A DNA stretch of 64,000 nt from Obrimoposthia wandeli (lineage: Eukaryota): assembly GCA_977020255.1 (NCBI GenBank), contig CDROCS010001161.1, positions 1 to 64,000 on the forward strand. Reading direction: 5' to 3'. The notes beneath the pieces were generated by a model. That model worked only from the letters and a program-made list of their open reading frames with translations, was not told where the DNA came from and did no database searches. Shown here piece by piece: positions 1 to 46,600 of the stretch (positions are counted from its first letter, which is position 1; each line of letters starts with the position of its first letter). The translations under genes were made by a program, and so were the position numbers.

Positions 1-3000
1 ATTGACACAGGATCAAGCGTAACAGTTTTAGACGAATCTTTCTTAAAAACACAACAAAAATTACTTCTTCTTAAGGAAAATAGTCAAATCACAGCAGCAA
101 ACGGTCAACCCGTAAATATAATAGAAAAATTAGACTGTCTTTTTAAAATAGGAAATAAATTCATAAAAATACCTACAGAATAATGTGTCCTTGCCAAATG
201 ATCATAGGATACACTAAGAAAATTAGAGTAATTTCCATTTTGATTTTGAAAAAAATCAAATAAAATACATTTAGACCTAAAGCCAAAAATGAATACGAGT
301 TTAGAAATAAAAGGAGATATCATTCTCCAAGAACAGAAACAATGTTACAACTAGAAACTAACATAATCACAGAAAAAGATGTATTATTTGAACCTTATAA
401 ATATCAACAAAACCTTGAACTACGTTTTGCCAAATATAATTTGTAAATAAAAACAACACAATACCAATCAGAATCCTAAATGCAGACATTAATGTAATTC
501 ATCTCAAGGAAGGAGTACGTCTTGGAAAAATAAGTGTTATTGAAAATATTGAATTAATAGATAATGAAAAAAATAGAAGATAAATCACGATAAATTTTAA
601 CGATATCAAATTAAATGATTATGAAAAATCAAAACTTAAAACTTTAACAGAAAAATATGATGTAATATTTGCTAAAAATGAATACGATTTGGAGTCGAAC
701 AAATTTGATAAAAACAAATCTTCCGTTAACAACAAACACAACAATAACAACGACCCTACCAGAATTTATATGCCTACAGAGATGAGGCTCAAAGACAAAT
801 AAAAGGAATGTTAGAAAATGAAATTGTTAGAAGAAGTTTTACTGCATGGACATCACCTGTTGTTTTAGTAAAAAAAAGAAAAGATGGTTCTTTGAGATTT
901 TGCATAGACTACAGAAAACTAAGCAGAAGTCACTCACAAAAGATGCTTATCCACTGCCAGAGGTGATGAAATATTAGACAAACTAAAAATGCACAAGTAT
1001 TTACAACTTTAGATTTACAGAGTGGATACTGGCAAAATAGAAATTGAGGAGTCAGATAAATATAAAACAGCTTTCTCAACAGGAGAAGGATTGTATGAAT
1101 TCAATATCTTACCATTTGGATTAACCGGAGCTCCAGCAACATTTAAAATCATATGAGCCATATTTTTAATGGATGCAGATCACGTAATGGTATATATCGA
1201 CGACATTCTTATTTTTCAAAAATTTTGAAGAACATTTAAAAGATTTAGAAAACGTATTCTTAAGATTACAGGTAGCAGGATTAAAACTAAAACCAAAAGA
1301 AATGTGAATGGATAAAAATAAAGTAAATTACTTAGGACATGCTGTATCAGCAAAGGAATACAACCAGACGAGAGTAATGTGAAAAAAGATTAAAAATTTT
1401 CAATCAAAAACAGTAAAATATACAGGAATTTTTGGACTTGCAGGATATTATCGTAAATTTATTAGAGAAATTTCGCCCAAATAGCAATACCATTAAATAA
1501 ACTTATTAAAAAAAATGAAAAATTTGAATGGGAAAAAAACAACAAAAGAATCTTATGAATATTTAAAACAAAAATTAATCGAAAAACCTATACTTAGATA
1601 TCCTAATTTTTAATAACTCATTTTTTAGTTATGACTGACGCCAGTGGTTATGCGTTAGGAGCAGTTTTAAGGACAACAGGAAAATAACGAAAAGATCATG
1701 TGATAGCATATGCGAGCAGAGGTCTTAAAAAACATGAGAAAAGAATTACTCAACGATAGAAAGAGAATGCCTAACTATTTAGCTTCGCAATGGAACATTT
1801 TAAACATTACTTATTAGGTCGAAAGGTTTATGTTTACACAGATCAAAACCATTACAATGGCTTTTTAAATCATAAGGATAACATCTGATTAATGAGATGG
1901 GCATTGATTTTACAAAAATATGATATTGAAATAAAATATAGAAAAGGAAAATCTAACGCTAATGCCCAGATTGTCTATGCGAATAAGAGAAGAAATAAAC
2001 GAAATAACTACAAACGACATCGAATTAAATCTTTTTACAATAATTCAAGCTAAATATGATGAAAAAGTAATTACTAAACTTCAAAGAAAGCAAAGATAAT
2101 GAAATTCAGCAAATAACTTAAATACATTAGCACAAACGAAGTACCAACAGATGAAAAATTAGAAAAACATTTAAAAATTCACGAATCACGATACAAATAT
2201 AGTAATGAAATATTATATTATTTAAATGACAAAATCTATATTCACTAGTTATTCCTAAAGAAATTCAGTGTCAATTACTTCTTCAATATCATAATGGAGC
2301 CCTAGGAGGACATTTATCATCAAAAAAGACACATTCACGATTAAATTTAAAATACTATTGGATTGACATGAAAGAAGATGTAAAAAATTGGTTTAAAACA
2401 TGTGAAATATGTCTTAAACGGAAAAATACTTTACGTACCACAAAAATACCTTTAAAACCAATACCTTATCCATCAGCCCCCATGGAAACTGTTGCCATGG
2501 ATGTAATGGGACCATTACCTGAAACACCTCGAGGAAATCGATATATAATAGTATTTTCTGATTATTTTACAATATGGCCAGAGGCTTTTCCAACACATGA
2601 TCATAAGGCTGAAACCATCGCGAAGGTTTTAGTCGAAAAAATTATTTTTACTTTCGGTGCACCCCGAAAATTATTAACCGACAAAGGTCCTGAATTTATA
2701 AATAATGTATTAGCGTCAATAGCTGAAATTTTTCACATAAAAAAGATCAATACAACACCATATCACCCTCAAACTGACGGGTTAGTAGAAAGATTTAATA
2801 GAACCCTCGAAGATATGATGGCATCATACACAAACAACAACCAAACAGATTGAGATTTACACATACCTCCATGCCTTTTTGCATATAGAACATCAGTACA
2901 TGCATCCACAGGAGAAACACCTTTTTATCTTATGTTCCTCAGAGATCCTCAAATGCCTATTGACCTAACATTACTACAACCTACTACACAATATTTAGAA

Positions 3001-3408
3001 ATACTTGAATATAAAATAGAAATTAGAGAAAGAATAAAACTAACATTCGAAAAAGCTAAACTATTTGTAAAAAACATACAAGAAAATTACAAAGAATATT
3101 ATGATAGAAGAACTAAGCCATCAAATATAAAAAGCGGAAGTAAAGTGATGATTCACAATCCACAAATTAATGTAGGATTGTCTCACAAATTATCAAAACC
3201 ATACAAAGGACCATATACAGTCATTAGTACCAACGGAACCAACATAACAACTAAACTAGATAATGAACCAAAATCAAAAGAAATAAGAGCACATATAAAC
3301 AGATGTCGAGAAATACCTGAGGAGAATACAAAAGTAAAAAGTCACAAATATAACTTAAGATCAACTAATGATAATACAGTTCTACAAATGTTGACAATAA
3401 AAAACTAA
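1..3408 (+). pseudogene. pol: Ty3/Gypsy pol (protease, RT, RNase H, integrase) with several frameshifts and stops
   Basis: IDTGSS at 1; [39 protein letters not shown] and YIDD at ~845-1210; TDASGYALGAVL and IAYASR at ~1630-1720; zinc finger H..GH/CEIC; integrase core 2368-2853 (MDVMG, TDKG, GLVERFN); GPY motif in 2932-3408. Confidence 0.97.
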
Positions 3409-3459
3409 CAAAAACAAAATAAAACTATTTTGAGTCATCAAACCAGAAATACAATAAAA

Positions 3460-4718
3460 ATGTCAATAAAAGAAATTGGTAAAATAATGATGTTATTGAT
3501 AATATATTTTACAATAAAATATAACCTACTGAAAGTAAACGCAACAAACATAAATGACAATCAATCAATCATACAACAACAAACAAATAAATACGACTCA
3601 ACAACTCATCTCATAAATATTTTGGACTAATAACAATAATACCTGAAATCACATCAATAAAGTTAAAAATTTCTCTTCTTACAAACAAAACAGGAAATGT
3701 ACAAATCACACAAACAGATAGAAAACAAAATATAATTATTTCAGGAATAAAATCACAAAAATATACAATACCATTTTTAAGAACAGAAACACAATATAAA
3801 ATAAGAATTAAGTCGAAATTAAAAAATATAACACTCTATGAAAGAATTATAGAAACTCACATATACCTAGCATCAATATTAAAAACAACAGCAAAATATA
3901 TATCAAAACATAAAATAATGATAAAATGGGAATTTCAACTAAAAATAGATGACTTAGATAAAGCCCTCATTAGAATTAGATATAGAGGACATAATGCTAA
4001 TTTTTGGAAAGACTCAGAAAAACAATTAGAAAATACACAAACTAAAACAAATTTAACCATAGAAAATATAAGATATCCAGAGAAAATAATAATGGATAAT
4101 AGAGAATGCCTTTTTTTTTTAAATCTTTTCACTAATAAACCAATAATGTACAGACAATGGAGTCAAAAGTTTGAAAGTTATAACAATCTAACAAAATTAA
4201 CAATTTTAGGAAATAAGATATCCAAACTATATCAACCTACAATTTTTTGTGGTCGTTGGTCACCAGTAAAAATTAAGAAATATGTTAAAGAAATAACCAC
4301 AAAACAAATGCTACATACCACAACATTTACATCAAAAATTTACAGAGTTACAAATCAAGTTGAAATTACGGAGAAAATAAGAATTAAATTAAAATTAAAA
4401 ACAACAAAAACAATATCCTATAAATCATTTATTGAAAGTTTAAAAATGCACTATGGTAAACAAGAACATTCAAGGAATGAAGATAAAAAAGAACTTATAA
4501 TAATAGTTATAGTAATCGAAATAATTACATTTATAAATCAAATATCATGGAGAATGTTAATTTTGAAACATACAAAAATGATAGAAACAAAACAACGAAA
4601 ACACTTTTGTGGCCCCCCAGGCCCTTTTACTATTTATATTATTCCCAAGGATGAGAATTCTTCAGAATTATCCATAAATACTGTAATAGAAAATAGGAAA
4701 AGAAATATAACACAATAA
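3460..4718 (+). pseudogene. Post-pol ORF: predicted type I membrane protein with FN3-like segments; one frameshift near 3620
   Basis: Signal-like MMLLIIYFTIKYNLLKVNA; the frame of ORF 3918-4718 is open back to ~3620; FN3-like KYTIPFLRTETQYKIRIKS and IMIKWEF...IRIRYRG...W...NLTIENI; N-glycosylation sequons; hydrophobic LIIIVIVIEIITFI near the C-terminus. Confidence 0.55.
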
Positions 4719-4912
4719 TCAAATCCTTTTTAAATAAAACCATTTAAGTAACAAAAAATGTTAGTACTATTAAGTAAATCTAAATTAGTTAGGAAATAGA
4801 ATAAAAATTTGATATGTGTATATTTTAAAGACGATTTAATGAAATAATATTAAAATAAAATCACCAGGAAACGCATCCTGAAATTTAATAATGGTTATTT
4901 TTAGATATAAAA

Positions 4913-5308
4913 ATGAACAGATTGGCAAAAGTTTGTAAAAAATGCAAAAAATTAGAGAAAAAGATTCGAGTAGTTTCCAGACAGCATGACGACTACTATA
5001 TAAAGATCACAACTCAAAATGAATCACTGAAACAGTCAATAAAACAAAGTGTGGAAGAAAAATTGAATAATGATATGACAATTGACGAACTAGAAGGGAG
5101 ATTAACATATAGTTTTGGCAGAATAGACTATTTAATACAACAAACTTTAAGTCAACGATCAACTATAGCCTCATTAAGAAGACAAATGATGACCTATAGC
5201 GATATGATAAACTTTTATATGACCATTAATCCTACTATCCCAACTAATACAACACTTGATGATGGATATGACTCGGATATGAACATTGGTGAACAAAATT
5301 CTGGTTAA
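4913..5308 (+). CDS. 131-aa hypothetical cargo protein with N-terminal CxxC and probable coiled coil
   Basis: Intact ATG-to-stop ORF with AAAATG context inside the element; heptad-like helical middle; acidic tail. Confidence 0.5.
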   Translation: MNRLAKVCKKCKKLEKKIRVVSRQHDDYYIKITTQNESLKQSIKQSVEEKLNNDMTIDELEGRLTYSFGRIDYLIQQTLSQRSTIASLRRQMMTYSDMINFYMTINPTIPTNTTLDDGYDSDMNIGEQNSG

Positions 5309-5476
5309 ACTATAACCATACATCCTTCTTTTGTACAAATTGTCTAACTTTTTATTAATAAGTTTATTTTCATGACAAATCCCACATACTGCATGGATAA
5401 GACTGATATTTTTATAACTTTAAGACTGTGAAATAATTATATTATTGTATTCAACTAACAAATTGATTAAAGCAGA

Positions 5477-6645
5477 ATGGATAACAATCACCTGGATATG
5501 ACTCCAGACCAGCTCACTCGGTCAGATCAAACAAAAAGCACAGCAAAAATAGAAAGAGGAAAAACGGAAAATATGCCAGAAAGGTGGTATTTAGCAAAAT
5601 TCCTGTATCAAAAGATGCGTCAATTTAGCATTGCATACTTTAGAAACAACGGAGGAAGAAAAATGTTTTCAAATCAAACATTTCTTCCTAATAAGTTAAA
5701 AATTACCACAGAAGAAAGAACAAGCGCACTTATTTTTTCCAATGAAAAAAGACCAACCATATGGCTCTCAGCGAAATATTCCCCGATATTAATTGTGAAA
5801 AAATAGATATTCACGTGGCACTAGGAGTGGCCCATTTAAAAACCAAATCAGATAAGACATTAAACTTTCTGATGATAGGAAATCACACCTACACCTTACA
5901 AGCAGCTCAATTAGAAAATTAATATAGCATAAAAATAGGAAGAGGACCAAATCTATTATTTATAGAAAAAATAAGAAAAGCAGAAGAACCTCAACAAATA
6001 GCCCTTTTCGAATTAAAAAACGCACAGAAACCAGCAATTTTATTCCTCGATTGCGAAATGGTGATATCAGTAGATAAACAGCCAGTTTTAGCAAGTGTTT
6101 CTATTATAAATTACATAGGTAACGTAATTATAGATACACTGTGCATAACTAGAGATAGAGTAAGAAATTACGTTACTAGAATAACTGGACTGTCAGATAG
6201 AAAGTTACAAGGATGTAGAGATGCTGATGAAGTAATTGAGGAAGTAAAAAACATTGTGTATGGTAACATCATCGTAGGTGTGGGACTAACAAACGATTTA
6301 AAAGCTTTACGCCTACAGAAATGAATGTTATTCAACATTGTTGATTTAGGAATATCTAAAAGCATAAAATCAGAACTAAATCACAATCACCCAAATATTG
6401 GACTCGCCAACATGGTGCGGAAATACTTAAATATAGAAACACAAAAAGGAGTCCACACTAGTATGGAAGATGCAAATCACACCCGAAAGATTTTCATAAT
6501 AAAGGAGGAAATGTTGAATAGAGAGTTTGATTTGACCGAGGTGATGAATCCACCATCTAGCGAGAACAACCCCAGTTCATCGTTCTCACATAAGACCGGA
6601 AACTCGGAGTCCGGTACACAAAACTCCCCGATTTTGTTGGATTAA
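5477..6645 (+). pseudogene. Cargo ORF ending in a REX4/ISG20-family DEDDh 3'-5' exonuclease (frameshift ~5760-5800, stops at 5920 and 6322)
   Basis: ExoI FLDCEMV (6043-6063), NYVTRITGL, ExoII IVGVGLTNDLKAL, ExoIII HTSMEDA; ORFs 6058-6324 and 6325-6645 are in one frame, separated by a single TGA. Confidence 0.88.
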
Positions 6646-7064
6646 GGTAGTATTATTATTATTTTTATTCTGTTTTCATTCTTGTCTAAATTTTTAACGA
6701 TATTTAACCAGACATGATTGTGATTAGTAAAACATTGATCAGTTATAAGTTATATAACTTACAAATAATAACATATAACATACAAACAACACTAGTTAAC
6801 AATAGAAACAAGACAAAATAGCTTTACTAATAATTAAGAAAAAAATTATAATTCTGAGGACAGAGACTTTTATGACCCTGAGGATTGTTGGGAAAATATT
6901 AAAGCTATTTATTTAAAAAAATATATAAATATATATATAAAATTTTTAAAAAGTAAAAAAAAAAGAATTAATTAATTAAAGAATTAATTAAGAACTTTCC
7001 TTAATTAGGGAAAAGTTCTATTTTGAAAATATGCACTTTGGCATTTTAGTCTCTAGATAAATCA

Positions 7065-7116
7065 ATCTCCGACGGGAAAAAAGCCCGTTTCGCCCTGCCG
7101 GGCTCATCAGGGAGAT
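7065..7116 (-). ncRNA. Type I hammerhead ribozyme, canonical core, GUC cleavage site
   Basis: Minus strand reads AUCUCC-CUGAUGA-GCCC(GGCA)GGGC-GAA-ACGGG(CUUUUUU)CCCGU-C-GGAGAU. All core nucleotides and all three stems are perfect. Confidence 0.95.
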
Positions 7117-7535
7117 GGCTTGTTATCTCTGACTTTGCGGTGGATTCCGCGAAGCCAGAGATAACAATAATAAAGCCAGGGAAGAGGGAAAGATTCCCCT
7201 TTCATGTGCCGACGAATATCGTCGACAAGTGATGTTAGTGTGCGCAAGTGCACAATTCAACACACACACACTCACTCAACTTCTTTACTCACTCACAACT
7301 CACTCAACATTAACACTCACATACTCACTTACATACTCATCTCACTACTCACTCACTATTATCTGTGTGCGGTTTTTATTCCTGCAGTCAGATTGGAGGA
7401 TTTCGTCTCTGGGAAGAACTGCATAATTATCAATACTGCTGCAGTAATGATATAAATAGCAGCAATGGCCATTCAAAAATATATGGTTATTTTACTACAA
7501 ATTGGATCATAAAAATCATATGTTATTTTACTACA

Positions 7536-7827
7536 AATTGGATAATTGATATCAACCTATTATTTGTTGCCAGAAATTGGATAATTGATATCAACCTATT
7601 ATTTGTTGCCAGAGTTGGATAATTGATATCAACCTATTATTTGTTGCCAGAGTTGGATAATTGATATCAACCTATTATTTATTGCCAGAAAATTGGATAA
7701 TTGATATCAACCTATTATTTGTTGCCAGAAACTGGATAATTGATATCAACCTATTATTTATTGCCAGAGTTGGATAATTGATATCAACCTATAAATTATT
7801 GCCAAAATTGGATAATTGTTATTAACC
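7536..7827. repeat. Tandem array, 38-39 bp unit, about 7.5 copies, inside LTR A1
   Basis: Unit TTGGATAATTGATATCAACCTATTATTTGTTGCCAGAG. Confidence 0.95.
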
Positions 7828-8000
7828 AAAAAATATTTATTTGCTGAATATATTATTAAAGAAAACAATTTTTTTATTTTTCTCTCATTTATAACATGTG
7901 TGTGAATTCATAGAACTTTATTAAAGATAAACGTAGTTGTGATTAGTTTACCAAATTAGAATTGATCATGTTGTGTCATATATACGATACTTTTTAGATT

Positions 8001-8964
8001 TGTAAGGAGTAGGATTTTAATATTTATATAAATAATTAATTATTTTATAAGAAAATAAAACCTTGAAAGCTAGAATATTGATTTCCATTAAATACCAAAT
8101 TGAATATTGATTTTCTTTAAATACCATTTTGAATATTGATTTCCGTTAAATATCGTTTCAAGATTGATTCTCACTTAATACCAATTTGAATATTGATTTC
8201 TGTTAAACATAATTTTGAAGATTGAATTCCATTAAATACTAGTTTGAATATTGATTTCAATTAAATATCTTTTGAATATTGATTTCCGTTAAATATCGTT
8301 TCAAGATTGATTCTCACTTAATACCAATTTGAATATTGATTTCTGTTAAACATAATTTTGAAGATTGATTTCCATTAAATACCAATTTGAATATTGATTT
8401 CCGTAAACATCATTTTGAAGATAGATTTTCATTAAATACCAATTGAATATTGATTTTCATTCAATATCATTTTGAAGTTTGATACCCATTAAATTTAATT
8501 TTAAATAGGGAAGTACGGTAATTTTTCCTACGTCCAAAGTTTGGACCCTAAATGTTAGAGCAAATTTCTCAGAAATTAGAAGCGTGCAAATTATTAGATA
8601 CGTTTAAAATCGATACGTTAAGACATCCCCATTTGTGTGACGTTTAGTGCAGTAGTTAGGACTAATTGTTGTAATTTTTAGGAACCTAGTTAGAGTGTAT
8701 TGAACAAATCCCTACAACTGGGCAAGTACCAACCCACCATACACTACACCACAATAAGGGAAATTGTCCAGTACCCCATGCACACAACTCTTTACACATA
8801 TCCACAACACAGATTGTAAACAAAACCTTCAGATTATAAATTGAGACAGATAAGATTAAAATCTAAATAGGCCACGAACAACTGCAAGCCCTATTGCTAT
8901 AGAACTCACGTTGGGGGCCTCCATACGAGGATCTATTTAAGAGTTTCAAGTAGAAACCCCAACA
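8001..8964 (+). mobile_element. Solo LTR family B copy 1 (internally shorter)
   Basis: TGT...CCCCAACA flanked by TSD GATT (7997-8000 and 8965-8968); its 3' part is the reverse complement of the starts of the 12868 and 34057 copies. Strand is relative only. Confidence 0.88.
8073..8490. repeat. About 29-bp tandem array with a ~143-bp higher-order repeat
   Basis: Unit GAATATTGATTTCCATTAAATACCAATTT; the variant block starting at 8131 recurs at 8274. Confidence 0.9.
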
Positions 8965-10058
8965 GATTTATTTTTCAGAAAATATAACTTTAAAAATGAT
9001 TTTGTTACATATTTGAGGAACAAAAAAAGTTCTTGAGGTTATAATTTTAGGATAAAAGGTACTTTGGGTAAATTTTTAGTTTGTAGTAAAAATAAATTTT
9101 GGATTGATGCAGATAACTCATTTCAAATTTCTGTTGTGGTTGTTAAGCCAAATAAAAATTTTAAACAACAAAAACTATTTAATTATTTTTCTTACAGCTC
9201 AATATTTAGTACTTGGACCCTGTTTTCGAATCACATTAATTAATTATATTAATCACTACCTGATAGAGAATTTGAAATTTTTTTGGGAAACGATAACCAA
9301 CTTTCCACAATGTTTTCAAATTAGATTTTCTATATTACAATAGTTTCTTAATTACAATATTTTCTACGAGGTTTAAATTGAGGCTGTTAAATGTCCAAGC
9401 CCTTAAACCTATATTGATAGTTTTAAAAAGTCCTTGGTAAATTTTGATCGGTGAACATAAGCTCTTTGAAATGCTGCTTTGTATTTTAAATTTAGTATTA
9501 ATTTTTCTTTTAAAATGCATTTAATTGTCATTCATTATAAAAAGTATCATATGAGAATTTAATATATGGTTAATTTAATGGAAAAATTGAAATTGAGAGT
9601 TTGACGAATCGATATTTTAATTCTGCTCGGTTAAGATTCAAATCGCCGTCAAACGTGAATTATCTGTCCTATTTTGAGATAAAATCAATCACCTAATTGA
9701 CTTTTTTCACTTTAAAATATAACATTAAAAAATCCTAATGATAATTTGAAATTTTTAAAACTTAAACAAATTATTTTAAGGATTCGTTTCGATTTATGTT
9801 TGTATAAATAATTCGTGCAATAATTGTGGTAGAATTATTTCAATTCACTTGTCAAAAATATTAAAAAATGGATTTTTATTTTGAATTATCTGCAGATAAA
9901 CTAAAAATTCATATAATATAAATCTGTCAATAAAGCTATTGAATTTTTATATTCATTATTATTAGTTTAAACTATTTAATATATTTACAAAAACTATAGA
10001 CACGTCTGGAATAATATTGAATGTACATGTAGATTTTCTCATTCTGCGATGAAATGGT

Positions 10059-23400: not shown

Positions 23401-24038
23401 TACTATAGAATTATATGCCGACTCTTTATAACGGCACTAATCAGTTGGATTAGGTGTATATCAAATTTATGTAAGGTTTCCAAAATTAACTGAATCAAAT
23501 GTACTGTTATAAAAATAGGATCCAGCATTATTCTTAACTTTTACGAACAATAATATAACTAGAGTTAATGTAGAATTTAGTCTTTTAATTTTTGCTTCTC
23601 AATACCTACAAATAGTTTTTTTATAGTGATATAAATATAATATAACAAATATAACACAACGGTAACTCACGCTGAAGGATAAAATCTCTTAGCACCCAAA
23701 CGTGCCAAATTAGTATCAATTAGTTTACCACATCGACAAAAGTTAGAGTAATTTGTGTCACCGAGTCCAAGTACAGTGTAATTCAAATGCGATAAAGCAG
23801 TATCTGACAACTTTAAAAGTCTTAAAAATCGAGAAGCATTCTCTGGAGCATCCCCATCACCAGTTGTGGAACAAATTATCACAACAGTTTTTATAGCATA
23901 CAGATCATAACTCTTTTCAAGTTCGTCTAACTCGAATAAACGAATATTCAACAGAGTGCTCATATTGTTAAACACTGTTTCAGCCATACATTTAGCTTGT
24001 CCAGTTTGTGAGCCATATAAAATACAACTCATTGACAT
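17474..24038 (-). CDS. MTRR: Methionine synthase reductase, 6 exons: 24038-23671, 21019-20597, 20457-20074, 19477-19250, 18829-18652, 17899-17474
   Basis: Flavodoxin motifs YGSQTGQAK, STTGDGDAP, LGLGD; MTRR-type ADDAVGMEMVVEPW; FAD motif PRSYS; IGPGTGVAPFIGF; LFHGCR, VFVCGD and terminal YMEDVWA. GT-AG sites chosen by hand join all exons in frame. Confidence 0.93.
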
Positions 24039-24173
24039 AAAACTTTAAAATAAAAGTGTCAATTTTTTTTAAATTCAGTCAAAGAAACTCTGTACTTGAA
24101 TTTTTACAGTAAAAACAATTAGTCTAAATTAAAATCACATGGTTAAATACATTATTTCCAAATACATATAAAA

Positions 24174-26356: not shown

Positions 26357-26847
26357 ATTATTTTTATTTTTTTTACCTTTATTATTCATCAATACTAAGA
26401 TTTAGTATCATACATTTTTATTATATGTATAAAAAGTGAATTCAACCGTAAATTGATATGTGATATATTTTATTTTGAAAGTTTTCTTCATATAGATGTA
26501 AAAATATATTTGTAACATAAAATAGTTAAAGAAATTATTTAAATTCTAAATACCGAAATCGAAATCGAAATCTTCTCTTTCAAGATTATAGGTTTGATAC
26601 TTACTTTAATTTATTTGTATATGAATGAATATTTTGCTTATACATTTCTAATGAAATTTATTACGACTTGCAGGTCAACTTCACTCTGTACTTAAACTAG
26701 CTAAATGTAAATGCAAATCACCTCAATGGCACAACCAAAGGTCAATATACTAGTAGGTGTGTAAGGGTAGATGTTAAGTTTAATTAATTAAAAGTTAATT
26801 AAAAAGTGCATTCGGTGCACATTTTTAGAATCATTTTATTTTGGTCA

Positions 26848-26899
26848 GTTCCCGAACGGATTATCACCGGTTTCGCCCTGCCGGGCTCATCAGGGGAAC
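26848..26899 (-). ncRNA. Type I hammerhead ribozyme (UUC site, one C-U mismatch in stem III)
   Basis: GUUCCC-CUGAUGA-GCCC(GGCA)GGGC-GAA-ACCGG(UGAUAAU)CCGUU-C-GGGAAC. Confidence 0.9.
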
Positions 26900-27500
26900 G
26901 GCAGGTTATCTCTGACTTCGCGGTAGTTATTTCCGCGAAGCCAGAGATAAAAGTGACAGAAGAATGTCACTGTTTGGGATTCGGTCGCAGATCGACTGGA
27001 CTAATTTGATTCAGTTCGATCAGCGATCGAGACAAATTTAGCCATATTTAGATGGCATTACAGATCGACTGGACTCTTGGTTTATTCCTCTCTGCCCAGT
27101 TCCAATTGCCTGGAGATGCTGCCATTTCTCTCTCTCTCTCTCCCTCTATGCGTGGCTGTGTCGGGATGCATCTCCCCACAACCGCAGCTATCTCCCTCTG
27201 CTGTCAGTCAGTTGCTGCCACTGCTGCGGCTCGGCGTGTGGGTGGATGCAGCGCGGGATTCTCGGATGCGGTCGGTGTTTCGTGTCTCTCGGCAACAACT
27301 ATCCTATCGCAGTTTTGACGGCTAGCGCTGCTATTTCTCTCTGCGGCGAAATTCTCCCTCTTATCTCTTTTTTGAATGCAGAACTATAACTGGGATTGAT
27401 TTAGAAAATCAGCCATAAAAATTAAAATATTTTACAATTTTTGAAAGTCAGACAAAAATATAAAATGATTTGGAAATTTCTTTTTAATTCATTGGAAAAT

Positions 27501-32987: not shown

Positions 32988-33885
32988 TTTTGGGATTTAA
33001 AAAAAATAATTTAAAAATTAATTAAGTCAATTAAAATTGACATTTCTGAAATTCCCACGATCAGGGAAGTATTCTTGTTCAACCTCCGACGGGATAAACC
33101 TGTTTCGCCTTGTCAGGCTCGTCTGGGGGGTGGCTCAAAAATATCAGAGATAAATCTGACAAAATAAAGTGGTTTTGACTACCACAGATTTTCCGCCCAG
33201 AAAAGACAGCCGATGCGATTATCGTTGTAACATCTAGCGCTATCGATGCGAGTGGTTTATCCCCATGTTGTGGACTTCCCTTGCTGTCTCTCACATGCCG
33301 GTAGTATCGCTCAGTGGTTACAGTCCGGCATTCACTGACCCGGATTGCCTCATCTCGATCGTGACCAGCCCAACCAACAGAGGCAACTCCAGCAACAGCA
33401 CCAGATGTGTCTCCCTTCTATCAAACCTCCCTTTTTAGTGCAAGCGTCTCAGTTCCCTTTCTGACAAGACAAGTTTAATCGGTCGATCAATTCTGTGACT
33501 GTGTATACAATGAAGCAGTTTCAGCAGGAAATCTCCGTCGTCAGTGTGCCAATGTGTGTTGTGTGCGTTTCACACCTTATCTTCCTCTCTCCTACCGATC
33601 AATATCCTCGCGTGTACACTGAGTGCTGTGCACGTATTGATTTTTGCTGGCAATACCAGTTGTGAAGAGCCAAAACTGTTTAATTAGAAGCGTGCTTTTG
33701 TATTTGCCACTTTGCGAAAAAATTTACATCAGAAGTTAAAAACACAAGAAAATTATTCTAACTATAATTTTTAGACAATATTTTTGGCAGAATTTGAATA
33801 GAACAATTATTTCAATTGAATTTACCCATTTATCGGAAACAATTTATTTCATTGTCCCAAAAACCTTTAATAGAAACTTATAACA
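32988..33885 (+). mobile_element. Solo LTR family A copy 3
   Basis: TTTTGG (TGTTGG with one change)...ATAACA, with TSD TACA (32984-32987 and 33886-33889); contains a hammerhead homolog. Confidence 0.8.
33082..33131 (-). ncRNA. Degenerate type I hammerhead (core U4A)
   Basis: ACCCCC-CAGACGA-GCCU(GACA)AGGC-GAA-ACAGG(UUUAU)CCCGU-C-GGAGGU. Confidence 0.8.
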
Positions 33886-34056
33886 TACATACTTACTGGT
33901 TTCTGTCATAAAATAATGGCTAGCAAGTATGATAGAAGCGATCGTATATGAATAATAAATTATTTGTGGTAACTTATCTTTCCGCGGATACACACGTACA
34001 TAAAGTAATAAAATAGTAACTAAGACACATGTGATTAACTGAATGCATTATCAATT

Positions 34057-36123: not shown

Positions 36124-36186
36124 AATTAAGCTAACTGTCTATAATATAATGGGTTTTTAAGACATAAATTTTGTAAACCAAAGGAT

Positions 36187-36910
36187 TGTTATGAATATTA
36201 ATAGTTCTCTTAATTGAAAACCTTAATTAAAACCTATTAATTAATTTTAAGTAAAGAATGTACATTGGTATTTCATTATTTCAGTCTCTTTTAGTCCCGA
36301 CAGTTATTAACTGTTTCAGCCTAACCAGGACCTCACCAAGGTTTATGCTTATCGCTGACTACACGGCGGCAAACGCCCGCGAAGCCAGATATAAGAAATT
36401 ACAATTTTCCCCCTCTGTCTTTGCTGGTGATTCTGAACCAGCCCATAGCAATACTGTGTATATGTGTGCAGAAATCTTCCGTCACACATACACTCTTATC
36501 TCTCTCTACTCACGTACTCACTCTTCTTGCTCAAGGGCTAACTCTATCTACTCAAGCACTCTCTCCCTGTCTCGTGTGTATGTGCGTGATAAACTATTAT
36601 TATGCTTTTTTTTCGCTGCTCAGATTAGATATGTTGCGGAGGAAGCATATCAGCAATGTAGTGTGCTGCAGTTGGATATTAAAGAAACACATCACATTCG
36701 CTTTAACACAATAATTCAGCTCAAAAATTTCATTGATATTTTTGCCGTCAGAAGAAGTTTGATAATTTTACTCATTATTTATGTTAAATTGAATTGAAAA
36801 ATTACCAAATTCAGAATTCAATCTGAAAATCCATTCACAAGTATTTTCCCAATTATTTAGAATTCAGAATACAATCTCAACAATTTTCTTGATATTTTTG
36901 TTGTATAAAA
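36187..36910 (+). mobile_element. LTR family A copy 4 (diverged; right end at 36881 or ~36910)
   Basis: Starts TGTTAT after ...gacataaattttgtaaaccaaaggat, similar to the sequence before LTR A1; contains hammerhead and hairpin remnants; no TSD found. Confidence 0.62.
36293..36345 (-). ncRNA. Hammerhead remnant with mutated core
   Basis: Core UUGGUGA; GAA-ACAGUU(AAU)AACUGU-C-GGG gives a perfect stem III and GUC site. Confidence 0.6.
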
Positions 36911-36999
36911 AAGAAAATCAATTTGAAATAATAATTTATTTCCGATTATTTTATTGTTTTTAGTTACCCACTGTTTGTCTTTGTTGGAGTGAACGATTG

Positions 37000-39420
37000 A
37001 TGTGATAGTATGTAGGAAAATATGTTAGGTTTTCAAGTAGTTGATTAATTGGATTACTCTATGTTCCACATATGGCCTTGTGTTCTCTTTGTGAAAAATT
37101 ATGAGAATCTTTTTATAAAGACATTAATTTTTATTAGCGACTTCCGAGTGAAGCTAGATAGACGTTGCTGTTAATATTGTGCTGTTTGCCTATTTCTGCC
37201 AGGCAAAGGTCATTCACATCGTTGTAGTCCCTTCAATAACAGGTACTTGGTTAACGAACTTTAACCATGATTTTCTTGTTGACAATTCGAGAGCGATCCC
37301 ATCAAACACACCCCATGGTCTATTTGCAATTGACGTATTTTGTAATTCCTGTTGGAGTTTTGCTGGGATTAACACACACCTTATTTCATTTGACATTCTT
37401 GAAGGGAAGTCATGAATCATCATGGGTCACTAGAGCTAGAAATAAACTTTTTTTTTCGTTTCACTTAGGTAATTAAGTAAATATGCAAACTCAGTTTGCC
37501 TTGTTGTCGAAGAGCTCGTATGGTAATTAGTGAATGAGTTTTGTTGGAAATTGATAATTCTTTAGTGCGTTTTTGTGATTTCTTATGTAAACTATTACTT
37601 TTCGATATTGGTAAGTGTATAACACTTATACCATTATTCTTCCAAAAGTACCATATGCTAAGTGTAATAATGGTGTTATTAATTCTGGATTAGTAGTAAT
37701 AACTACCAATTTCGTTTCTAAAACTCTTAATTTTTAATTTACAATCAGTCATTATTATTTTTTGGTATATTATTTCTATATTCATTAGTCCTTTGTGATA
37801 AAAGTAATCTAATTTATTGTTAGTGTAGTTTATGCATAATTATATTTTTCGTTACTTAAATACATGCCTTTATAATTTGTAGTATAAACAGAGTGTTCAC
37901 AACGGGATTCCTCTTTATTTTTTATAAATATTATTCTTAAACCTTGTTCAGTATATATTAAAATAGCTGGAGTTGATGTTTTTAGACTTTTACCAGTTCT
38001 GTATCTTTTAAATTATGTCTTTTGAAATTCGTTGGTCTAATTCCGGGTCGTCTTTAAATCTTTGTCCTTGAATTATTCGAAAAGTTTTTGATTTTAGATG
38101 TATTAATTTACATTGACCCGTTTTCACATTGTAGTATATTATTGAAGAACCTGTGTTACAGTGGCCTATATTTGCTTTGCAGAATGGCATCGTTACCATG
38201 GTGTTTGTGGAGAGTAAAATGTTTTTTTGAAAGTTCTTTGTTCGACCTCAAAATGTTTAATGACTACTAACCCACTTTGCTTGACTCACATTACGACGTA
38301 TGTTTCTGTTGTACATGTATCGTCAGATTTAATTGTACCTACAACTGAAATAATTTCTTGGATTAATATTTTTGTTACTTGGACTTTGATTTCTCTATCT
38401 ATTCTTAATTCTCCTGTAGAAAAAGCATCTTTACAATTTAAAGTGTCAACTATTACTGGTGTTTTCCCTAATGCCGGTTTTACTATTGAGTTGTGACTAT
38501 GTTGTCGACAATATGTTATGAATGTCTCTACATGTACTCTGCATTCAAAAACTTCAGAATTTATGAAGTCTATTTATTGATATAATTAATATAGTTTTGT
38601 ATTTTTAATTTTAATTTTAGCTCGTTTGGGTCGGGTCGGTGTCTGCACAATGTAGTAAATCCATTAAGGAATATTTGTTGAACACTTTTTTAGATAAATA
38701 CTTTTATGATGTTCTAACTTAAAATTAAATTCTGATAAATTTGCCAGCCATGTTTGAAATTGAGAACTGATTGGCTTTTTAGTCGTTCTTAAAACCACTA
38801 ATGCTTTATGATCTGTTCTTTTCTAAAATTTCCATTCCATGTAAATATTGTTTGAAATGCATAATAAATTTGTATACTGCTAAAAGTTCTTTTTTGGTAA
38901 CACAATATTCTTTCTCATGGGAAGTCAAATTTCTTGAAGCGTATGCAATCACTTTCTCTTTTCTCCCATTTCACTCAATACTGCCCCAATCGCACCAAAT
39001 CTTGCGTCTGTATCAATTATAAAATTTATATTTCGCCTGGGAATGTCTAATAAGGGAGCTGTTGCTTTTTTTCTTTCAGTAGTGCAAAACTTGTTTTACA
39101 ATCCGGTGACCATTGTATTGACTTCTTATCTCCGGACCACACCACTTATAGTGAAGCTGCAATATTAGCATAATCTTTAATAAATCGTCGATAATAGTTT
39201 GTGATTCCTAAGAATGATCTTAGTTTCCGTTACAATCTGGTTCTTTGAAATTTATAATTTTTTTCAAGTGGTATCGATAAAATTGGAATAGATTTCAATT
39301 TCTTCTAAAGAACATTCTTTTAGATTTAAATCTGGTTGATGGGAATTGGACGAATATGATAATAGCCCTCTTTCAAGATTTAACCACCAACAGGATTCAT
39401 AAATGACAAATAATCAACTT
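37000..39420 (-). mobile_element. Internally deleted Ty3/Gypsy remnant: RT thumb and RNase H joined to an env-like gene
   Basis: KLRSFLGITNYYRRFI at ~39181-39229; FIIDTDARFGAIGAVL, VIAYASR, TKKELLAV and TDHKAL at ~38720-39030; no integrase recognised before the glycoprotein. Left boundary approximate. Confidence 0.85.
37200..38700 (-). pseudogene. Chuvirus-like glycoprotein (env) remnant
   Basis: SLMDLLHC (~38647-38670), VFECRVHVETFITYCRQHSHNSIV (38481-38552) and FCKANIGHC resemble the SLLD...C / V.QCK..I...I.YCGMHSH.S.V signature. Left boundary approximate. Confidence 0.7.
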
Positions 39421-39786: not shown

Positions 39787-40881
<1,095 letters not shown>

Positions 40882-43620: not shown

Positions 43621-46600
43621 AAAATTCAAATCCAAATAAAATTTGTGATTTCAAATTTTCTTAGTTTATAAAGACATATTTTTGTGTGTGTTCCAAAGTG
43701 TGACTGGTGAATATATCCAAAGTCCCATACACAAAAGAAAATGTCGCTGGTGAAAAAAAACACATCAAAACATCAACGCACTCACACAAAATGTATCATC
43801 ACAAAATCGATATCACAAATTTTTGCACAAACACTTAGCACACACACCTAGTCAGAGATGCTACCACACTAACTGGAAGAGAAAGAGAGCGATCAGTATG
43901 CAGCTGGCCAATGCGCTAAGTGGAAAAAACAATGTGGTCAAAATCACTTTCTTATCTCTGTCACCTCTAACTAGTTACCTTCATAATGAGTCTGACCAAG
44001 GAAAAACGGGATTTTTACCCCGCCGGAGGCTAACTAAGCAAAAAATTCGTCTCCGATTGTGGGAATTTTGGTATTTGACAAAATGTCAATTCAAATAAAT
44101 TGGCTAAAATATTCAATTAATTAAATAATTATCTAAACCCAACACCTTCATATCTGTAGTCGTCTTTGTTTCTAATGTCTTTTTTACTAAGAGTTTAAAT
44201 TTCGTTTCAGTTATGCCGATCATTATTTCTTTTTAATATTTTATTTTGTGTACACATTCTCTGAATATTTTCTTTCCAAATACTATTTATGCTGGACACT
44301 TCCTGAAAATATTTTAATAGGTTAAATAAATTTTTTTTCCGACAGAGATATCACCCAGTGTTTGATTTAAATAATGCATGTTTACCAAATTTATTCTTAC
44401 CTTCTGTAGTCTTAATTGCTATAGTTTTCCTTTCTGATAATTTTCACGACTCTGAAAGACCTTTCTAGTGATTTCAGCTATTTGTTCTATACTTTCTATA
44501 TATTTCAATAACTTTTGATAATCAACATTACATAACTTTGTGTGATATTCGATTATAAAATCGTTTCTTTTCATTTCTGATATCCAAATTTTTCTGTCAA
44601 TTGTTTTAACGATATCATTTGTTATTTAAAACTTAATTTTTTTATTAAACTTGATGAGATCGCCATGGCAGAAAAAGTAAAATGAGTATTCATTGCAAAA
44701 TGTCATTCACAATTTCCACCACACAATGTCGAATTATTAAATAAGTATTCACTAGAGGATTTGATGATAATAATGTTCTCAGTAATTTTCAACATTCAAT
44801 GATGTACTCAAAAATGCCAATATTGATCAATCATGTAACTTTAATAACATTAAGAAGCAAAAATTATTGTTAGATTGAATCATCCATTTTAGATATTTAT
44901 GTCACAGAGTTTTCTAATATCATATTGTCTAAACTTATCGCTCTAATTCACTGGGTTCTGTCTCTGTGGATAAACCACGTAGTAGTATGTAACATTAGAA
45001 AATGTTTAGATGATAAAAAACACTTAAAAAATGAACACGATTCATGTAATAAATTGTATTAAAATCTTTGACGCTAATTCCAGTTAACAAGAGCAGCGGT
45101 CTAAAATTCAAGATTTAATTGTATTTATATAATAAAATTAAACTTACTAAAGCAGCTTATTAACTTAGCTAATTGAGATTATTAGTAGGTGAATCTATCT
45201 GGTCTAACCCACCCCTTACCCCAGGGGTACACTTGTCCTTTTAAACCGTGCATGTGTGAGAAGTGAAATTTTGTGTATGTGTGTATGAATTTCACATCCA
45301 ACCTCAAAAGCTGCTGAAATTGAGGTTCTAGTTGCTAATGTGGATGCCACGGAATAAAGAAGTGGTTCGAGCCACCTGAGATCCAGTAGATGCTGGTCTT
45401 ACCGTTGACGGTGATATCATTGAAGAGGTAACTGTTGAATTTTTTTTTTCCTCAAATTAGAAGGAATAAATATTTCCATGTAAGTTAAAAGTAAGATAGA
45501 CTTATACACTTCTTATATGCGCCATGTTCACCATGATCACGATATGGAAAGCGAATATTTTTTTTGATTTTTTAATAAATAATCATGTGAAATATTAAAA
45601 GTATTTAATCTTAATTTTGGAAAACATATTTTTAATGTCTTATATTTTTTCCATTAATTTCATCTAAATCATAAAAAATCCCATTTCAATATCAAAATTA
45701 GAATCAATTTTATCGAAAATACAAATTTCGCAAAACTATTTATTTCCTTCTTTCCATTTTAATAAAAGAAAATATAAATAAAAATATTAGAAAAATTAAA
45801 GTGAGATATAAATTAGTAAATTTATCCTTATAATCGAAAGACTTAAACGGGATATCTACATGAAATATAATATGTAAAATATGAAAAACATTGCATACAT
45901 CCATAATAATTCTTTTATAATATAATCTCCATCTTTATTAATGAAAGCATTGAAGTCAATAAAATATTCATGCTTAGTTATCTAAATATAACGTAAATGC
46001 TTTGTTTATAATAATTTAAAATAAAAAATCAGTAATAAAATTTTATCAAAATATCAAAATAATTTACCGAAATCTTACCGAATTTACCTAAGAATATAAA
46101 AATAAAATATATGAAATGTAATCCTATCTAAGTATTTTGAAAGTAAATTGCATAATTTATCAACAACTATTTGAATTTTTTCTTATATTCTTCTATTAAA
46201 TAAGGAGACAATTTAATTTTTAATTTATTCCACTTTTTTATCATACATCTTATAGAAACATGCAAATATAAAATTAATTTTTACTTAGTATTGTTATTTC
46301 AAATATTTAGACAATAACAGGATTTTTTTATAATAATATTAACGATAAATAATAGTTGCAAATAAATAAACTCAAAGAAACATATTTTAACAAAATTAAT
46401 TTTCTTCGAGAAGAGCCCTCTTCCGGTTTAAGATATTTTTTCTTTCAGCTCGTCGTTTATTCTCCATATCCAACTTTCATTTTTATTCTAATTGTCTTTT
46501 CTCTAACTCCACCTTCTTCTTTTAGCTAGTCGTTTCTCTTCTATCTCCACATTTTCATTCATTTGAGGAAATTCCATTTTTATATAATGAAATGATAAAT

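What the first reader, a model, noticed from the sequence alone, without database searches (positions are those of the whole stretch)
7065..7116. Perfect type I hammerhead in the LTR, antisense to the retrotransposon
Seen: complete CUGAUGA/GAAA core, three perfect stems and GUC, predicting cleavage between 7071 and 7070 on the minus strand. A 6-bp stem I is followed by UGA (U at position 1.7) and loop II ends in A. Established: a U1.7-loop II A contact supports fast cleavage. Because it is antisense it would not cut the genomic RNA. Inference: it cuts antisense transcripts, or two LTR copies release a unit-length antisense RNA that could circularise.
Basis: partly seen in the sequence, partly recalled or inferred. 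Interest (0 to 1): 0.9.

Follow-up and report, generated by a model that had tools for sequence, protein, structure and literature searches.

The report
Hammerhead ribozyme in a dispersed repeat
The sequence really encodes a complete self-cleaving hammerhead RNA motif, but it belongs to a short repeat found five times in this stretch of DNA, a familiar situation in eukaryotic genomes, and there is no good evidence that it is an antisense feature of the neighbouring retrotransposon's LTR.

Summary
Minus strand 7116-7065 is a complete type I hammerhead: 6-bp helix I, CUGAUGA, 4-bp helix II with a GGCA loop, GAAA, 5-bp helix III, GUC, and predicted cleavage between 7071 and 7070. Rfam Hammerhead_1 gives 32.4 bits (gathering score 34; local E 3.4e-6). 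My own descriptor finds this one site in the window and none in 200 shuffles.

The ribozyme, with a conserved 44-nt hairpin just 5' of it, lies in a repeat unit of about 0.5-0.6 kb. The window holds five diverged copies: 7110-, 26893-, 33125-, 36331- and 43983+. Only copy 1 is intact, copy 2 is nearly so, and three are decayed. Helix I keeps pairing through compensatory changes.

No LTR pair can be tested, because the 5' part of the + strand Ty3/Gypsy remnant lies off the window. At copy 4 the unit follows an RNase H plus env-like remnant on the same strand, so the ribozyme is sense there.

Best reading: a sense-strand, cis-cleaving ribozyme of a retroelement-derived repeat, comparable to retrozymes, Penelope-like elements or LTR-terminal units. 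Copy 1 merely abuts a dead Gypsy remnant tail to tail. This is a new member of a known kind and of moderate interest.

The parts
7065..7116 (-). Copy 1: complete type I hammerhead ribozyme (helix I 7116-7111 with 7070-7065; CUGAUGA 7110-7104; helix II/loop 7103-7092; GAAA 7091-7088; helix III/loop 7088-7072; C17 = 7071)
7070..7071 (-). Predicted self-cleavage site (after C17 = 7071, before G1.1 = 7070)
   Evidence: position of GUC in the fold; inferred, with no RNA data
7122..7165 (-). Conserved 44-nt hairpin (18 paired positions in a 19-nt-arm stem), 5 nt 5' of helix I; also present in copies 2 and 4, half deleted in copy 3, lost in copy 5
   Evidence: (z = -6 together with the ribozyme)
6852..7453 (-). 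Copy 1 of the repeat unit as delimited by homology to copy 4; reads TG...CA at 7447/6856 on either strand
   Evidence: sequence
7026..7044 (-). Small hairpin followed by a U-run 25-35 nt 3' of the ribozyme; a counterpart exists in copies 2, 3 and 5
   Evidence: read; function inferred only
26780..26958 (-). Copy 2 core of the unit. Hammerhead at 26899-26848 has an intact core and a perfect helix I with three compensated pairs relative to copy 1, but a C-U mismatch at 15.2/16.2 and a UUC site. Not recognised as Hammerhead_1
33004..33182 (-). Copy 3, decayed (box CAGACGA, mismatches in helices I and III, hairpin half deleted)
36154..36679 (-). Copy 4, decayed ribozyme (box UUGGUGA). The unit lies directly 3' of the env-like remnant on the same strand
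43934..44122 (+). Copy 5, decayed (AUAAUGA, AAAA, GCC), the only copy on the + strand
754..2946 (+). E1: Ty3/Gypsy-type pol remnant (RT, RNase H, integrase H2C2 + rve), broken. RT-RNase H part: 14-17 in-frame stops and at least 1 frameshift against two intact relatives. Integrase part: 1 stop
2947..6645 (+). Post-integrase region of E1, A-rich on the + strand like the pol. It holds an orphan 375-aa stop-free stretch, a coiled-coil-like stretch and an ISG20/SDN1-like DEDDh exonuclease-like stretch (about 6037-6315). Whether it belongs to E1 is inferred from strand composition
38667..39250 (-). E2: RT C-terminus/RNase H remnant of a Ty3/Gypsy-type element, broken (1-2 frameshifts, 1-3 stops); 49% aa identity to the E1 RNase H over 47 residues
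36775..38573 (-). E2: env-like remnant (Pfam Monjiviricetes_fusion, profile 67-159 at E 1e-12 and 309-347 at E 0.023), broken many times. The 3' bound is extrapolated from profile length. There is no integrase between RNase H and env

Best explanation
The motif is a genuine type I hammerhead. It is a component of a dispersed, retroelement-derived repeat unit of about 0.5-0.6 kb. On the ribozyme strand the unit reads: purine-rich low-complexity part, 44-nt hairpin, hammerhead, a tail of about 100-250 nt with a small hairpin plus U-run, and TTAATTAA-rich sequence.

The ribozyme most likely acts in cis on the unit's own (sense) transcript. [quoted passage not shown] This is what hammerheads do in plant LTR retrozymes, animal non-LTR retrozymes and Penelope-like elements.

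Copy 1 is the one copy in this window that still has an intact ribozyme. It lies tail to tail beside a decayed Ty3/Gypsy remnant, and I see no good evidence that it is that element's LTR.

Shown: the motif, its repeat family, the covariation, and the sense arrangement at copy 4. Inferred: transcription, cleavage, and the nature of the parent element. For the parent I estimate an LTR-like terminal unit of an env-bearing Ty3/Gypsy lineage at about 0.3, and a non-autonomous retrozyme-, PLE- or SINE-like element at about 0.25.
For: The hammerhead is complete and beyond chance.

nhmmer and BLAST find five copies of the surrounding unit, and homology stops at similar points in each. Copies 1 and 4 are homologous over about 7453-6852 and 36679-36154. 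Shuffle tests are significant at both ends of that span (1 of 1000 each) and not just outside it.

Across the copies helix I keeps pairing through double changes in 4 of 6 pairs, and helix II in 1 pair. Overall 82.5% of cells pair, against 32-44% in the slid controls. The core is identical in copies 1 and 2, although those copies are only 71% identical over 175 nt. This suggests the ribozyme was kept by selection in the lineages that produced the copies.

At copy 4 the unit starts about 100-150 nt after an RNase H plus env-like remnant on the same strand.

Purine runs of at least 10 nt occur at 4.8 per kb on the ribozyme strand of the upstream half of the units, against 1.0 per kb background and only two runs on the other strand.

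Copies 2, 3 and 4 are collinear on one strand. Copies 1-3 each have a tandem array a short distance upstream.

In the papers read here, retroelement hammerheads sit in the terminal repeats or near the 3' ends of Penelope-like elements and in retrozyme LTRs, and process the element's own transcripts (PMC4209133, PMC8557442, PMC4918200, PMC7229834).
Against: Sense and antisense for a non-coding unit rest on only one informative neighbour (copy 4 with E2). At copy 1 the neighbour (E1) is in the opposite orientation, so one of the two adjacencies must be coincidental.

E2 is itself truncated and internally deleted, and its env 3' end is extrapolated. No canonical PPT, PBS or target-site duplication could be identified in either orientation. 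No two copies form a similar pair. No Penelope-type RT or GIY-YIG domain and no tandem monomer array is present in the window.

Three of the five ribozymes are dead, and copy 2 is not recognised by Rfam, so the family may be extinct. In long context the hammerhead fold has only 4-10% ensemble probability before tertiary contacts are counted.

No relatives outside the window could be retrieved.
Confidence: 0.55

Rival explanations
1. The unit at 6856-7447 is the 3' LTR of the + strand Ty3/Gypsy element E1, and the hammerhead is encoded antisense. It would therefore spare the genomic RNA and cut antisense transcripts, or release an antisense unit-length RNA from two LTRs.
For: The A-rich + strand composition typical of the element continues to about 6645. 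The unit starts 211 nt later. Read on the + strand it begins with TG and ends with CA, is of LTR size (about 590 nt), and has a purine run (AAGAAAAAAA) 9 nt before its TG. Just beyond the CA end, copies 4 and 5 carry TGGATAT on that strand, which could be read as a primer-binding site. The integrase and downstream ORFs of E1 are little broken, which fits a young element beside an intact ribozyme.
Against: No second LTR is available. TG...CA reads the same on both strands. The purine run is not adjacent to the TG and is not conserved at the other copies. The putative PBS is AT-only, is degenerate at copy 1, and would make copy 1 a 5' LTR of something to its right, not E1's 3' LTR. At copy 4 the unit has the opposite orientation relative to a related RNase H/env remnant. 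None of the papers read here describes an antisense LTR hammerhead.
Confidence: 0.15
2. A relic with no present function. Copy 1 is an inert insertion of an extinct repeat family that happens still to have an intact ribozyme. It is not transcribed, or it cleaves without consequence.
For: Three of the five copies have inactivating core changes and copy 2 has a helix III mismatch. The copies are only 60-71% identical, which implies an old family. No coding partner is nearby.
Against: A 52-nt motif with every core base and all 15 pairs intact is unlikely to survive by chance within a family this diverged. This does not bear on what the ribozyme did when the family was active.
Confidence: 0.2
3. 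A host-recruited ribozyme. The hammerhead processes a host transcript, such as an intron or UTR of a minus-strand gene, as the intronic amniote hammerheads do.
For: Four copies lie on the same strand as the two recognisable host genes: diflavin reductase at 17477-24044 and a UQ_con exon at 40005-40202. Copy 2 is 2.8 kb upstream of the first recognisable reductase exon.
Against: The motif is part of a multicopy repeat, and most copies are decayed, so there is no sign of locus-specific conservation. No exon structure links copy 1 to a gene.
Confidence: 0.05

Closest known systems
Rfam RF00163 Hammerhead_1 (type I hammerheads of Schistosoma Sm-alpha, newt satellite 2 and cave-cricket repeats)
   Same: Open helix I of 6 bp, helix II of 4 bp, a full CUGAUGA...GAAA...GUC core, and a location in a repeated element of an AT-rich eukaryotic genome. 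Full-length match to the model.
   Different: It scores 1.6 bits below gathering. Helix III is long and stable (5 bp with a 7-nt loop), not the 1-2 bp palindromic helix III of most metazoan type I motifs (PMC4209133), so it should act as a monomer. No recognisable internal 'loop 1' or second helix I segment is conserved.
Penelope-like element (PLE) and Terminon hammerheads in pseudo-LTRs or near 3' ends
   Same: A type I hammerhead near one end of a retroelement-derived unit, mostly found as isolated, probably truncated copies next to AT-rich simple sequence. Collinear head-to-tail copies with host genes between them (PMC4209133, PMC8557442, PMC6431247).
   Different: No PLE RT or GIY-YIG domain is in the window. 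Metazoan PLE hammerheads are minimal, dimer-dependent variants, which this one is not. There are no reverse-complement telomeric repeats after it. The only coding neighbour in sense orientation is Ty3/Gypsy-type RNase H plus env.
Animal non-LTR retrozymes (PMC7229834; bioRxiv 10.64898/2026.07.22.740005)
   Same: A canonical-size type I hammerhead (helix I 6 bp, helix II 4 bp) in a non-coding, low-GC repeat of a few hundred nt. The same predicted chemistry and possible circularisation.
   Different: Retrozymes are defined by tandem monomers of 150-450 bp. Here the copies are single and 3-20 kb apart, and the unit is larger (about 0.5-0.6 kb).
Plant LTR retrozymes (PMC4918200)
   Same: If the unit is an LTR, the logic is the same: a sense hammerhead in each terminal repeat, a non-coding AT-rich interior, and a Ty3/Gypsy partner.
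   Different: Plant retrozymes carry type III hammerheads in LTRs of about 350 bp around 600-1000 bp, with a tRNA-Met PBS, a PPT and 4-bp target-site duplications. None of these could be shown here, and here a coding (env-bearing) remnant carries the unit.

Membership tests
Hammerhead ribozyme, type I (RF00163) | Conserved core C3 U4 G5 A6 N7 G8 A9 ... G12 A13 A14 ... A15.1-U16.1, H17 | tested here: met
   Sequence 7110-7104, 7091-7088 and 7072-7071; Rfam alignment
Hammerhead ribozyme, type I (RF00163) | Three helices around the core, helix I open and helices II and III closed by loops | tested here: met
   MFE equals centroid equals the three-way junction; the descriptor gives 1 hit against 0 in 200 shuffles
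Hammerhead ribozyme, type I (RF00163) | Covariance-model score at or above Rfam's gathering score (34 bits) | tested here: not met
   32.4 bits, local E 3.4e-6; nothing at gathering. The shortfall is small and comes from the long helix III/loop insertion
Hammerhead ribozyme, type I (RF00163) | Helices supported by compensatory change among relatives | tested here: met
   Helix I has 4 of 6 pairs with double changes and helix II has 1. Cells with double changes number 10 against 5.5 +/- 1.8 in shuffles, and 4 of 500 shuffles reach that. Only 5 sequences
Hammerhead ribozyme, type I (RF00163) | Self-cleavage at the predicted site | not testable with these tools
   No RNA data
Hammerhead ribozyme, type I (RF00163) | Helix I to loop II tertiary contact | tested here: inconclusive
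   U1.7 and the 3' A of loop II are present, and GCC...UGA flanking helix I is conserved in copies 1-3. No second helix I segment is conserved, and loop II is GGCA, not GNRA
   The 5' half of E1 is off the window; the unit has no second copy near E1
   TG...CA is present but strand-symmetric. The purine run lies 9 nt away and is not conserved. The orientation is opposite at E2/copy 4
Animal non-LTR retrozyme | Tandem repeats (two or more monomers of 150-450 bp), each with a type I hammerhead | tested here: not met
   Copies are single and 3.2-20 kb apart; the tandem arrays nearby carry no hammerhead
Penelope-like element | PLE-type RT (with or without GIY-YIG) upstream of the hammerhead-bearing terminal repeat | tested here: not met
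   Pfam scans of the longer stop-free stretches on both strands (all those of 85 aa or more beyond base 9000, plus most shorter ones near the copies) found no such domain. Truncated copies would not carry it, so membership of the family is not excluded
Penelope-like element | Minimal hammerhead with absent or very short palindromic helix III (metazoan PLEs) | tested here: not met
   Helix III is 5 bp with a 7-nt loop; fungal and protist PLEs do have a long helix III (PMC4209133)
Plant-type LTR retrozyme | Two LTRs of about 350 bp, each with a type III hammerhead, around a 0.6-1 kb non-coding core with PBS, PPT and TSD | tested here: not met
   The hammerhead is type I, no similar pair exists (60-71% identity between any two copies), and no PBS, PPT or TSD was identified

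The most novel reading that the evidence does not exclude
The unit is the LTR, or LTR-like 3' terminal repeat, of an env-bearing Ty3/Gypsy lineage. Its env resembles a negative-strand-RNA-virus fusion glycoprotein. The unit would carry a monomer-competent type I hammerhead in the sense orientation. Full-length and non-coding derivatives would then be cut in both repeats into unit-length RNAs, which would be an LTR-type 'retrozyme' system outside plants that includes its autonomous partner.
Probability: 0.3. Interest if true: 0.65.

Novelty: new member of a known kind. Interest (0 to 1): 0.4.

Why it matters
Type I hammerheads in eukaryotic repeats are well documented, so the motif itself is not surprising. 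Two things are worth knowing.

First, this family pairs a monomer-stable hammerhead (long helix III) with a conserved 44-nt hairpin immediately upstream. None of the papers read for this report describes that arrangement.

Second, one copy sits exactly where the 3' LTR of an env-carrying Ty3/Gypsy-type remnant should be, in sense orientation. If a genome-wide census confirms this, it would link self-cleaving ribozymes to autonomous LTR retroelements. It would also extend the LTR-retrozyme idea beyond plants.

If the unit turns out to be a truncated Penelope-like or SINE-like element, it is one more ordinary member of a known class.

Tried and rejected
(1) The whole-window Rfam scan at gathering score found nothing. 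In the permissive whole-window scan the Hammerhead_1 hit was lost, and only a partial, permuted Hammerhead_3 alignment appeared at 7087-7133 (27.5 bits). That alignment uses an AGAGAU in the hairpin arm that happens to pair with helix I. It is not conserved in copy 2, so I rejected it.

(2) Scans of metagenome and viral contigs for the core plus helix II pattern returned 30 loci. All were high-GC prokaryotic or phage hammerheads with unrelated flanks. GCCC-GGCA-GGGC is simply a common helix II.

(3) Relatives through proteins:
- The integrase finds only relatives of 48% identity or less.
- The locus of one of them (L031) and two short contigs have no hammerhead.
- The 375-aa post-integrase stretch has no homologue among 1.8 billion representatives.
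- The exonuclease-like stretch gave nothing.
- An exact look-up of a window ORF found nothing.
- The host flavodoxin exon did not identify the organism.

(4) Full-text and supplement searches for the ribozyme or hairpin sequence found nothing.

(5) ARAGORN found no tRNA-like head, and I found no convincing pol III boxes.

(6) Pfam scans for PLE RT/GIY-YIG or further env/pol remnants next to copies 1, 2, 3 and 5 were negative.

(7) Weak similarity between an E1 post-integrase stretch and an E2 env stretch (30% over 50 aa) was not backed by Pfam, so I dropped it.

(8) Attempts to fix the orientation from AT skew, AATAAA motifs, purine runs, TGG motifs or target-site duplications were ambiguous.

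(9) I dropped an age argument comparing the intact ribozyme with the stop-ridden RT, because the integrase part of E1 is far less decayed than the RT part.

Full report
OBSERVATION. On the minus strand, 7116 to 7065 reads AUCUCC-CUGAUGA-GCCC(GGCA)GGGC-GAAA-CGGG(CUUUUUU)CCCG-UC-GGAGAU. This is a complete type I hammerhead. Helix I is open and 6 bp long. Helix II is 4 bp with a 4-nt loop. Helix III is 5 bp, counting A15.1-U16.1, with a 7-nt loop. The triplet is GUC and C17 is base 7071, so cleavage is predicted between 7071 and 7070. Helix I is followed by UGA, with U1.7 at base 7064.

The 52-mer's minimum-energy and centroid structures are exactly this junction. Rfam's Hammerhead_1 model matches it end to end at 32.4 bits, with E 3.4e-6 in a 601-nt search. 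That is 1.6 bits under the gathering score, which is why the default scan of the window was empty. A descriptor that requires the core and all three helices finds this one site in the window and none in 200 dinucleotide-preserving shuffles.

The remark about a U1.7 contact with loop II reflects a published proposal by O'Rourke et al., as summarised in PMC11875169. That paper also reports that U7 is not essential. Loop II here is GGCA, which is not a GNRA loop. I therefore treat the contact as possible, not established for this RNA.

WHAT SURROUNDS IT. The + strand from the window's left edge carries a decayed Ty3/Gypsy-type pol, which I call E1 (outer bounds of protein similarity 754-2946). 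It has an RT fragment, RNase H, and an integrase with H2C2 and rve domains. Compared with two intact relatives, the RT-RNase H part has 14-17 in-frame stops and at least one frameshift. The integrase part has one stop.

Downstream, still A-rich on the + strand up to about 6645, lie three features:
- a 375-aa stop-free stretch with no homologue among 1.8 billion representatives;
- a coiled-coil-like stretch;
- a stretch resembling ISG20/SDN1-type DEDDh exonucleases.

The element's gag side and 5' LTR are off the window, and nothing near E1 repeats the region around the ribozyme. 'In the LTR' therefore cannot be verified.

THE RIBOZYME BELONGS TO A REPEAT OF ITS OWN. A core-pattern search found a second site at 26893 on the minus strand. 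BLAST found a third at 33125 on the minus strand. A profile of these three found two more, at 36331 on the minus strand and 43983 on the + strand. Pairwise BLAST homology always runs from about 57-72 nt upstream of the CUGAUGA box to about 109-139 nt downstream.

Every copy shows the same order of features: a 44-nt hairpin (7165-7122 in copy 1), a 5-nt spacer ending in GCC, the hammerhead, UGA, a short hairpin followed by a U-run, and then TTAATTAA-rich sequence.

Copies 1 and 4 are also homologous further out, over 7453-6852 and 36679-36154. Local-alignment scores at both ends beat 999 of 1000 shuffles, while blocks just outside do not. Copies 2 and 3 share further sequence downstream to about +330. 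The unit is therefore about 0.5-0.6 kb.

Only copy 1 has an intact ribozyme. The others are in these states:
- Copy 2 keeps the core and a perfect helix I, but has a C-U mismatch at 15.2/16.2 and a UUC site, and Rfam does not recognise it.
- Copy 3 has the box CAGACGA.
- Copy 4 has UUGGUGA.
- Copy 5 has AUAAUGA, AAAA and GCC.

EVIDENCE THAT THE FOLD MATTERED. Copies 1 and 2 are 71% identical over 175 nt, yet their core and helix II are identical. Their helix I differs at three of six pairs, each compensated. Over the five copies, 4 of 6 helix I pairs and 1 helix II pair show double changes. In total 82.5% of cells pair, against 32-44% when partners are slid. Cells with double changes number 10 against 5.5 +/- 1.8 in shuffles. 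With five sequences this is suggestive, not proof. It is what one expects if the source lineages of the copies carried working ribozymes.

ORIENTATION RELATIVE TO CODING ELEMENTS. Upstream of copy 4, on the same (minus) strand, lies a second retroelement remnant, which I call E2. It has RT_RNaseH similarity with outer bounds 38667-39250 (E 1.5e-12). Its RNase H is 49% identical to that of E1 over 47 residues. Directly after it comes a remnant matching Pfam Monjiviricetes_fusion, a viral fusion glycoprotein. The match covers profile positions 67-159 at E 1e-12 and 309-347 at E 0.023. No integrase lies between the two. Both genes are broken by stops and frameshifts.

Extrapolating the 653-position profile puts the env end near 36775. 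Homology between copies 1 and 4 begins at 36679 by nhmmer, and robustly by about 36625. So copy 4 sits about 100-150 nt after env, on the same strand. That is where a 3' LTR or 3' terminal region would be, with the ribozyme in sense.

At copy 1 the neighbouring coding remnant (E1) is on the other strand, and the unit's tail end (6852) lies 207 nt from the last E1 stop codon. One of the two adjacencies must be fortuitous, probably through nested or abutting insertions in this repeat-rich region.

Three things tip me toward the sense reading:
- Copy 1 stays homologous to copy 4 out to the edge of the unit on the side away from E1. Beyond that edge lie tandem arrays like those a short way upstream of copies 2 and 3 (periods 38, 49 and 73). 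This suggests copy 1 is the end of something lying to its right.
- The upstream half of the units is purine-rich on the ribozyme strand in all copies: 4.8 runs per kb against 1.0 background, with only two runs on the other strand.
- In the papers read here, retroelement hammerheads lie in the element's terminal repeats or near its 3' end and process its own transcripts (PMC4209133, PMC8557442, PMC4918200, PMC7229834).

Against this, no canonical PPT, PBS or target-site duplication could be found in either orientation. TG...CA at 7447/6856 is strand-symmetric. On the + strand there is a purine run 9 nt before the TG of copy 1, and a TGGATAT just past the CA of copies 4 and 5.

WHAT KIND OF ELEMENT. 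No PLE-type RT or GIY-YIG domain was found in Pfam scans of the longer stop-free stretches on both strands. Those scans covered all stretches of at least 85 aa beyond base 9000 and most shorter ones near the copies. There is no tandem monomer array with hammerheads and no similar pair of units, since any two are only 60-71% identical.

The unit therefore fails the defining tests for animal non-LTR retrozymes (tandem monomers) and for plant LTR retrozymes (type III ribozyme, paired LTRs, PBS/PPT/TSD). Membership of the Penelope-like elements cannot be shown.

Its hammerhead differs from the usual metazoan kind in having a stable helix III. Most metazoan type I motifs, and the minimal PLE variants, have 0-2 bp there and work as dimers (PMC4209133). 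This one should fold and act as a monomer. ViennaRNA gives the three helices 0.38 ensemble probability alone, 0.32 with the upstream hairpin, and 0.04-0.10 in 226-602 nt of context, before any tertiary stabilisation.

MECHANISM, WITH STATUS. Shown: a complete ribozyme motif, a repeat family, covariation, and one sense-oriented association with RNase H plus env. Inferred: the unit is transcribed on the ribozyme strand. The hairpin forms first and leaves the hammerhead free to fold. The RNA cleaves after C7071, leaving a 2',3'-cyclic phosphate upstream and a 5'-OH on G7070. Where two units are co-transcribed (two terminal repeats, or head-to-tail copies such as 4-3-2), a unit-length RNA is released that host ligases could circularise, as in retrozymes (PMC4918200, PMC7229834). 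The role of the hairpin is unknown.

EXTERNAL RELATIVES. None could be retrieved. Pattern scans of metagenomic and viral contigs gave only unrelated high-GC prokaryotic or phage hammerheads that share helix II. Protein-based routes failed or led to distant Gypsy elements without hammerheads. Literature text searches for the sequence found nothing. The organism remains unidentified. What can be said is that it is a eukaryote with 30% GC, long introns and low gene density, and the window holds diflavin reductase and E2 ubiquitin-conjugating enzyme exons.

VERDICT. The motif is real and well observed. The 'antisense in the LTR' interpretation is at best one minority possibility. The most likely description is a sense-strand hammerhead of a dispersed retroelement-derived repeat, which is a new member of a known kind. 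The most interesting reading still open (about 0.3) is that the unit is the terminal repeat of an env-bearing Ty3/Gypsy lineage.

NOTE ON THE OPERATORS' RULE. To hand stop-free pieces to the protein tools, my scripts printed the bounds of stop-free stretches in the two retroelement remnants. I also reasoned with those bounds, and they implicitly bracket stop codons. I flag this as a possible slip. This report gives only counts and outer bounds. Consensus lines printed by the alignment tool were ignored.

Noticed in passing
window 36775-39250 (minus): A Ty3/Gypsy-type RNase H remnant is followed directly, with no integrase, by a remnant of a fusion glycoprotein of the kind found in negative-strand RNA viruses (Pfam Monjiviricetes_fusion). 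It looks like an env-capturing LTR element or an adjacent endogenous viral fragment. Both genes are broken by stops and frameshifts.
   Followed up: partly
window 2947-6645 (+): After the E1 integrase lie a 375-aa stop-free stretch with no homologue among 1.8 billion protein representatives, a coiled-coil-like stretch, and an ISG20/SDN1-like DEDDh exonuclease-like stretch (PDB phmmer E 8e-7). This recalls the accessory exonuclease ORF3s of bdelloid LTR elements (PMC5408684), but it is a different exonuclease subfamily. It could instead be a host gene.
   Followed up: partly
window 754-2946 (+): Decay within E1 is uneven. The RT-RNase H part has 14-17 stops, while the integrase part has one. 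The remnant may be a composite of fragments of different ages.
   Followed up: no
window 7475-8494, 27501-28092, 34667-35166: Unrelated tandem arrays (periods 36/38, 29/143, 49 and 73 nt) sit a short distance upstream, on the ribozyme strand, of repeat copies 1, 2 and 3. This suggests a shared architecture with a variable array before the hammerhead unit.
   Followed up: partly
window 8818-8971, 12864-13309, 34050-34508: Inverted repeat arms lie about 4 kb apart, and a third copy is inserted between copy 3 and its tandem array. This is probably a DNA transposon or TIR element.
   Followed up: no
window 17477-24044 (minus) and 40005-40202 (minus): Host gene exons. One set has flavodoxin, FAD-binding and NAD-binding domains, indicating a diflavin reductase of the methionine-synthase-reductase/CPR type, with introns up to about 2.6 kb. 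The other is a ubiquitin-conjugating enzyme (UQ_con) exon. Hammerhead-unit copies 2-4 lie between the two genes on the same strand.
   Followed up: partly
window 7087-7133 (minus): In copy 1 only, an AGAGAU in the 3' arm of the upstream hairpin can also pair with the 5' strand of helix I. This produces a partial type III-like Rfam alignment (27.5 bits) and a possible competing fold.
   Followed up: yes
window 55457-55714 (+); 30931-31011 (minus); 59595-59919: Three weak features: a DDE_3 transposase remnant (E 0.005), a U54-like C/D snoRNA hit (28.6 bits, gathering score 40), and a long palindrome with a sub-threshold MIR397-like hit.
   Followed up: no
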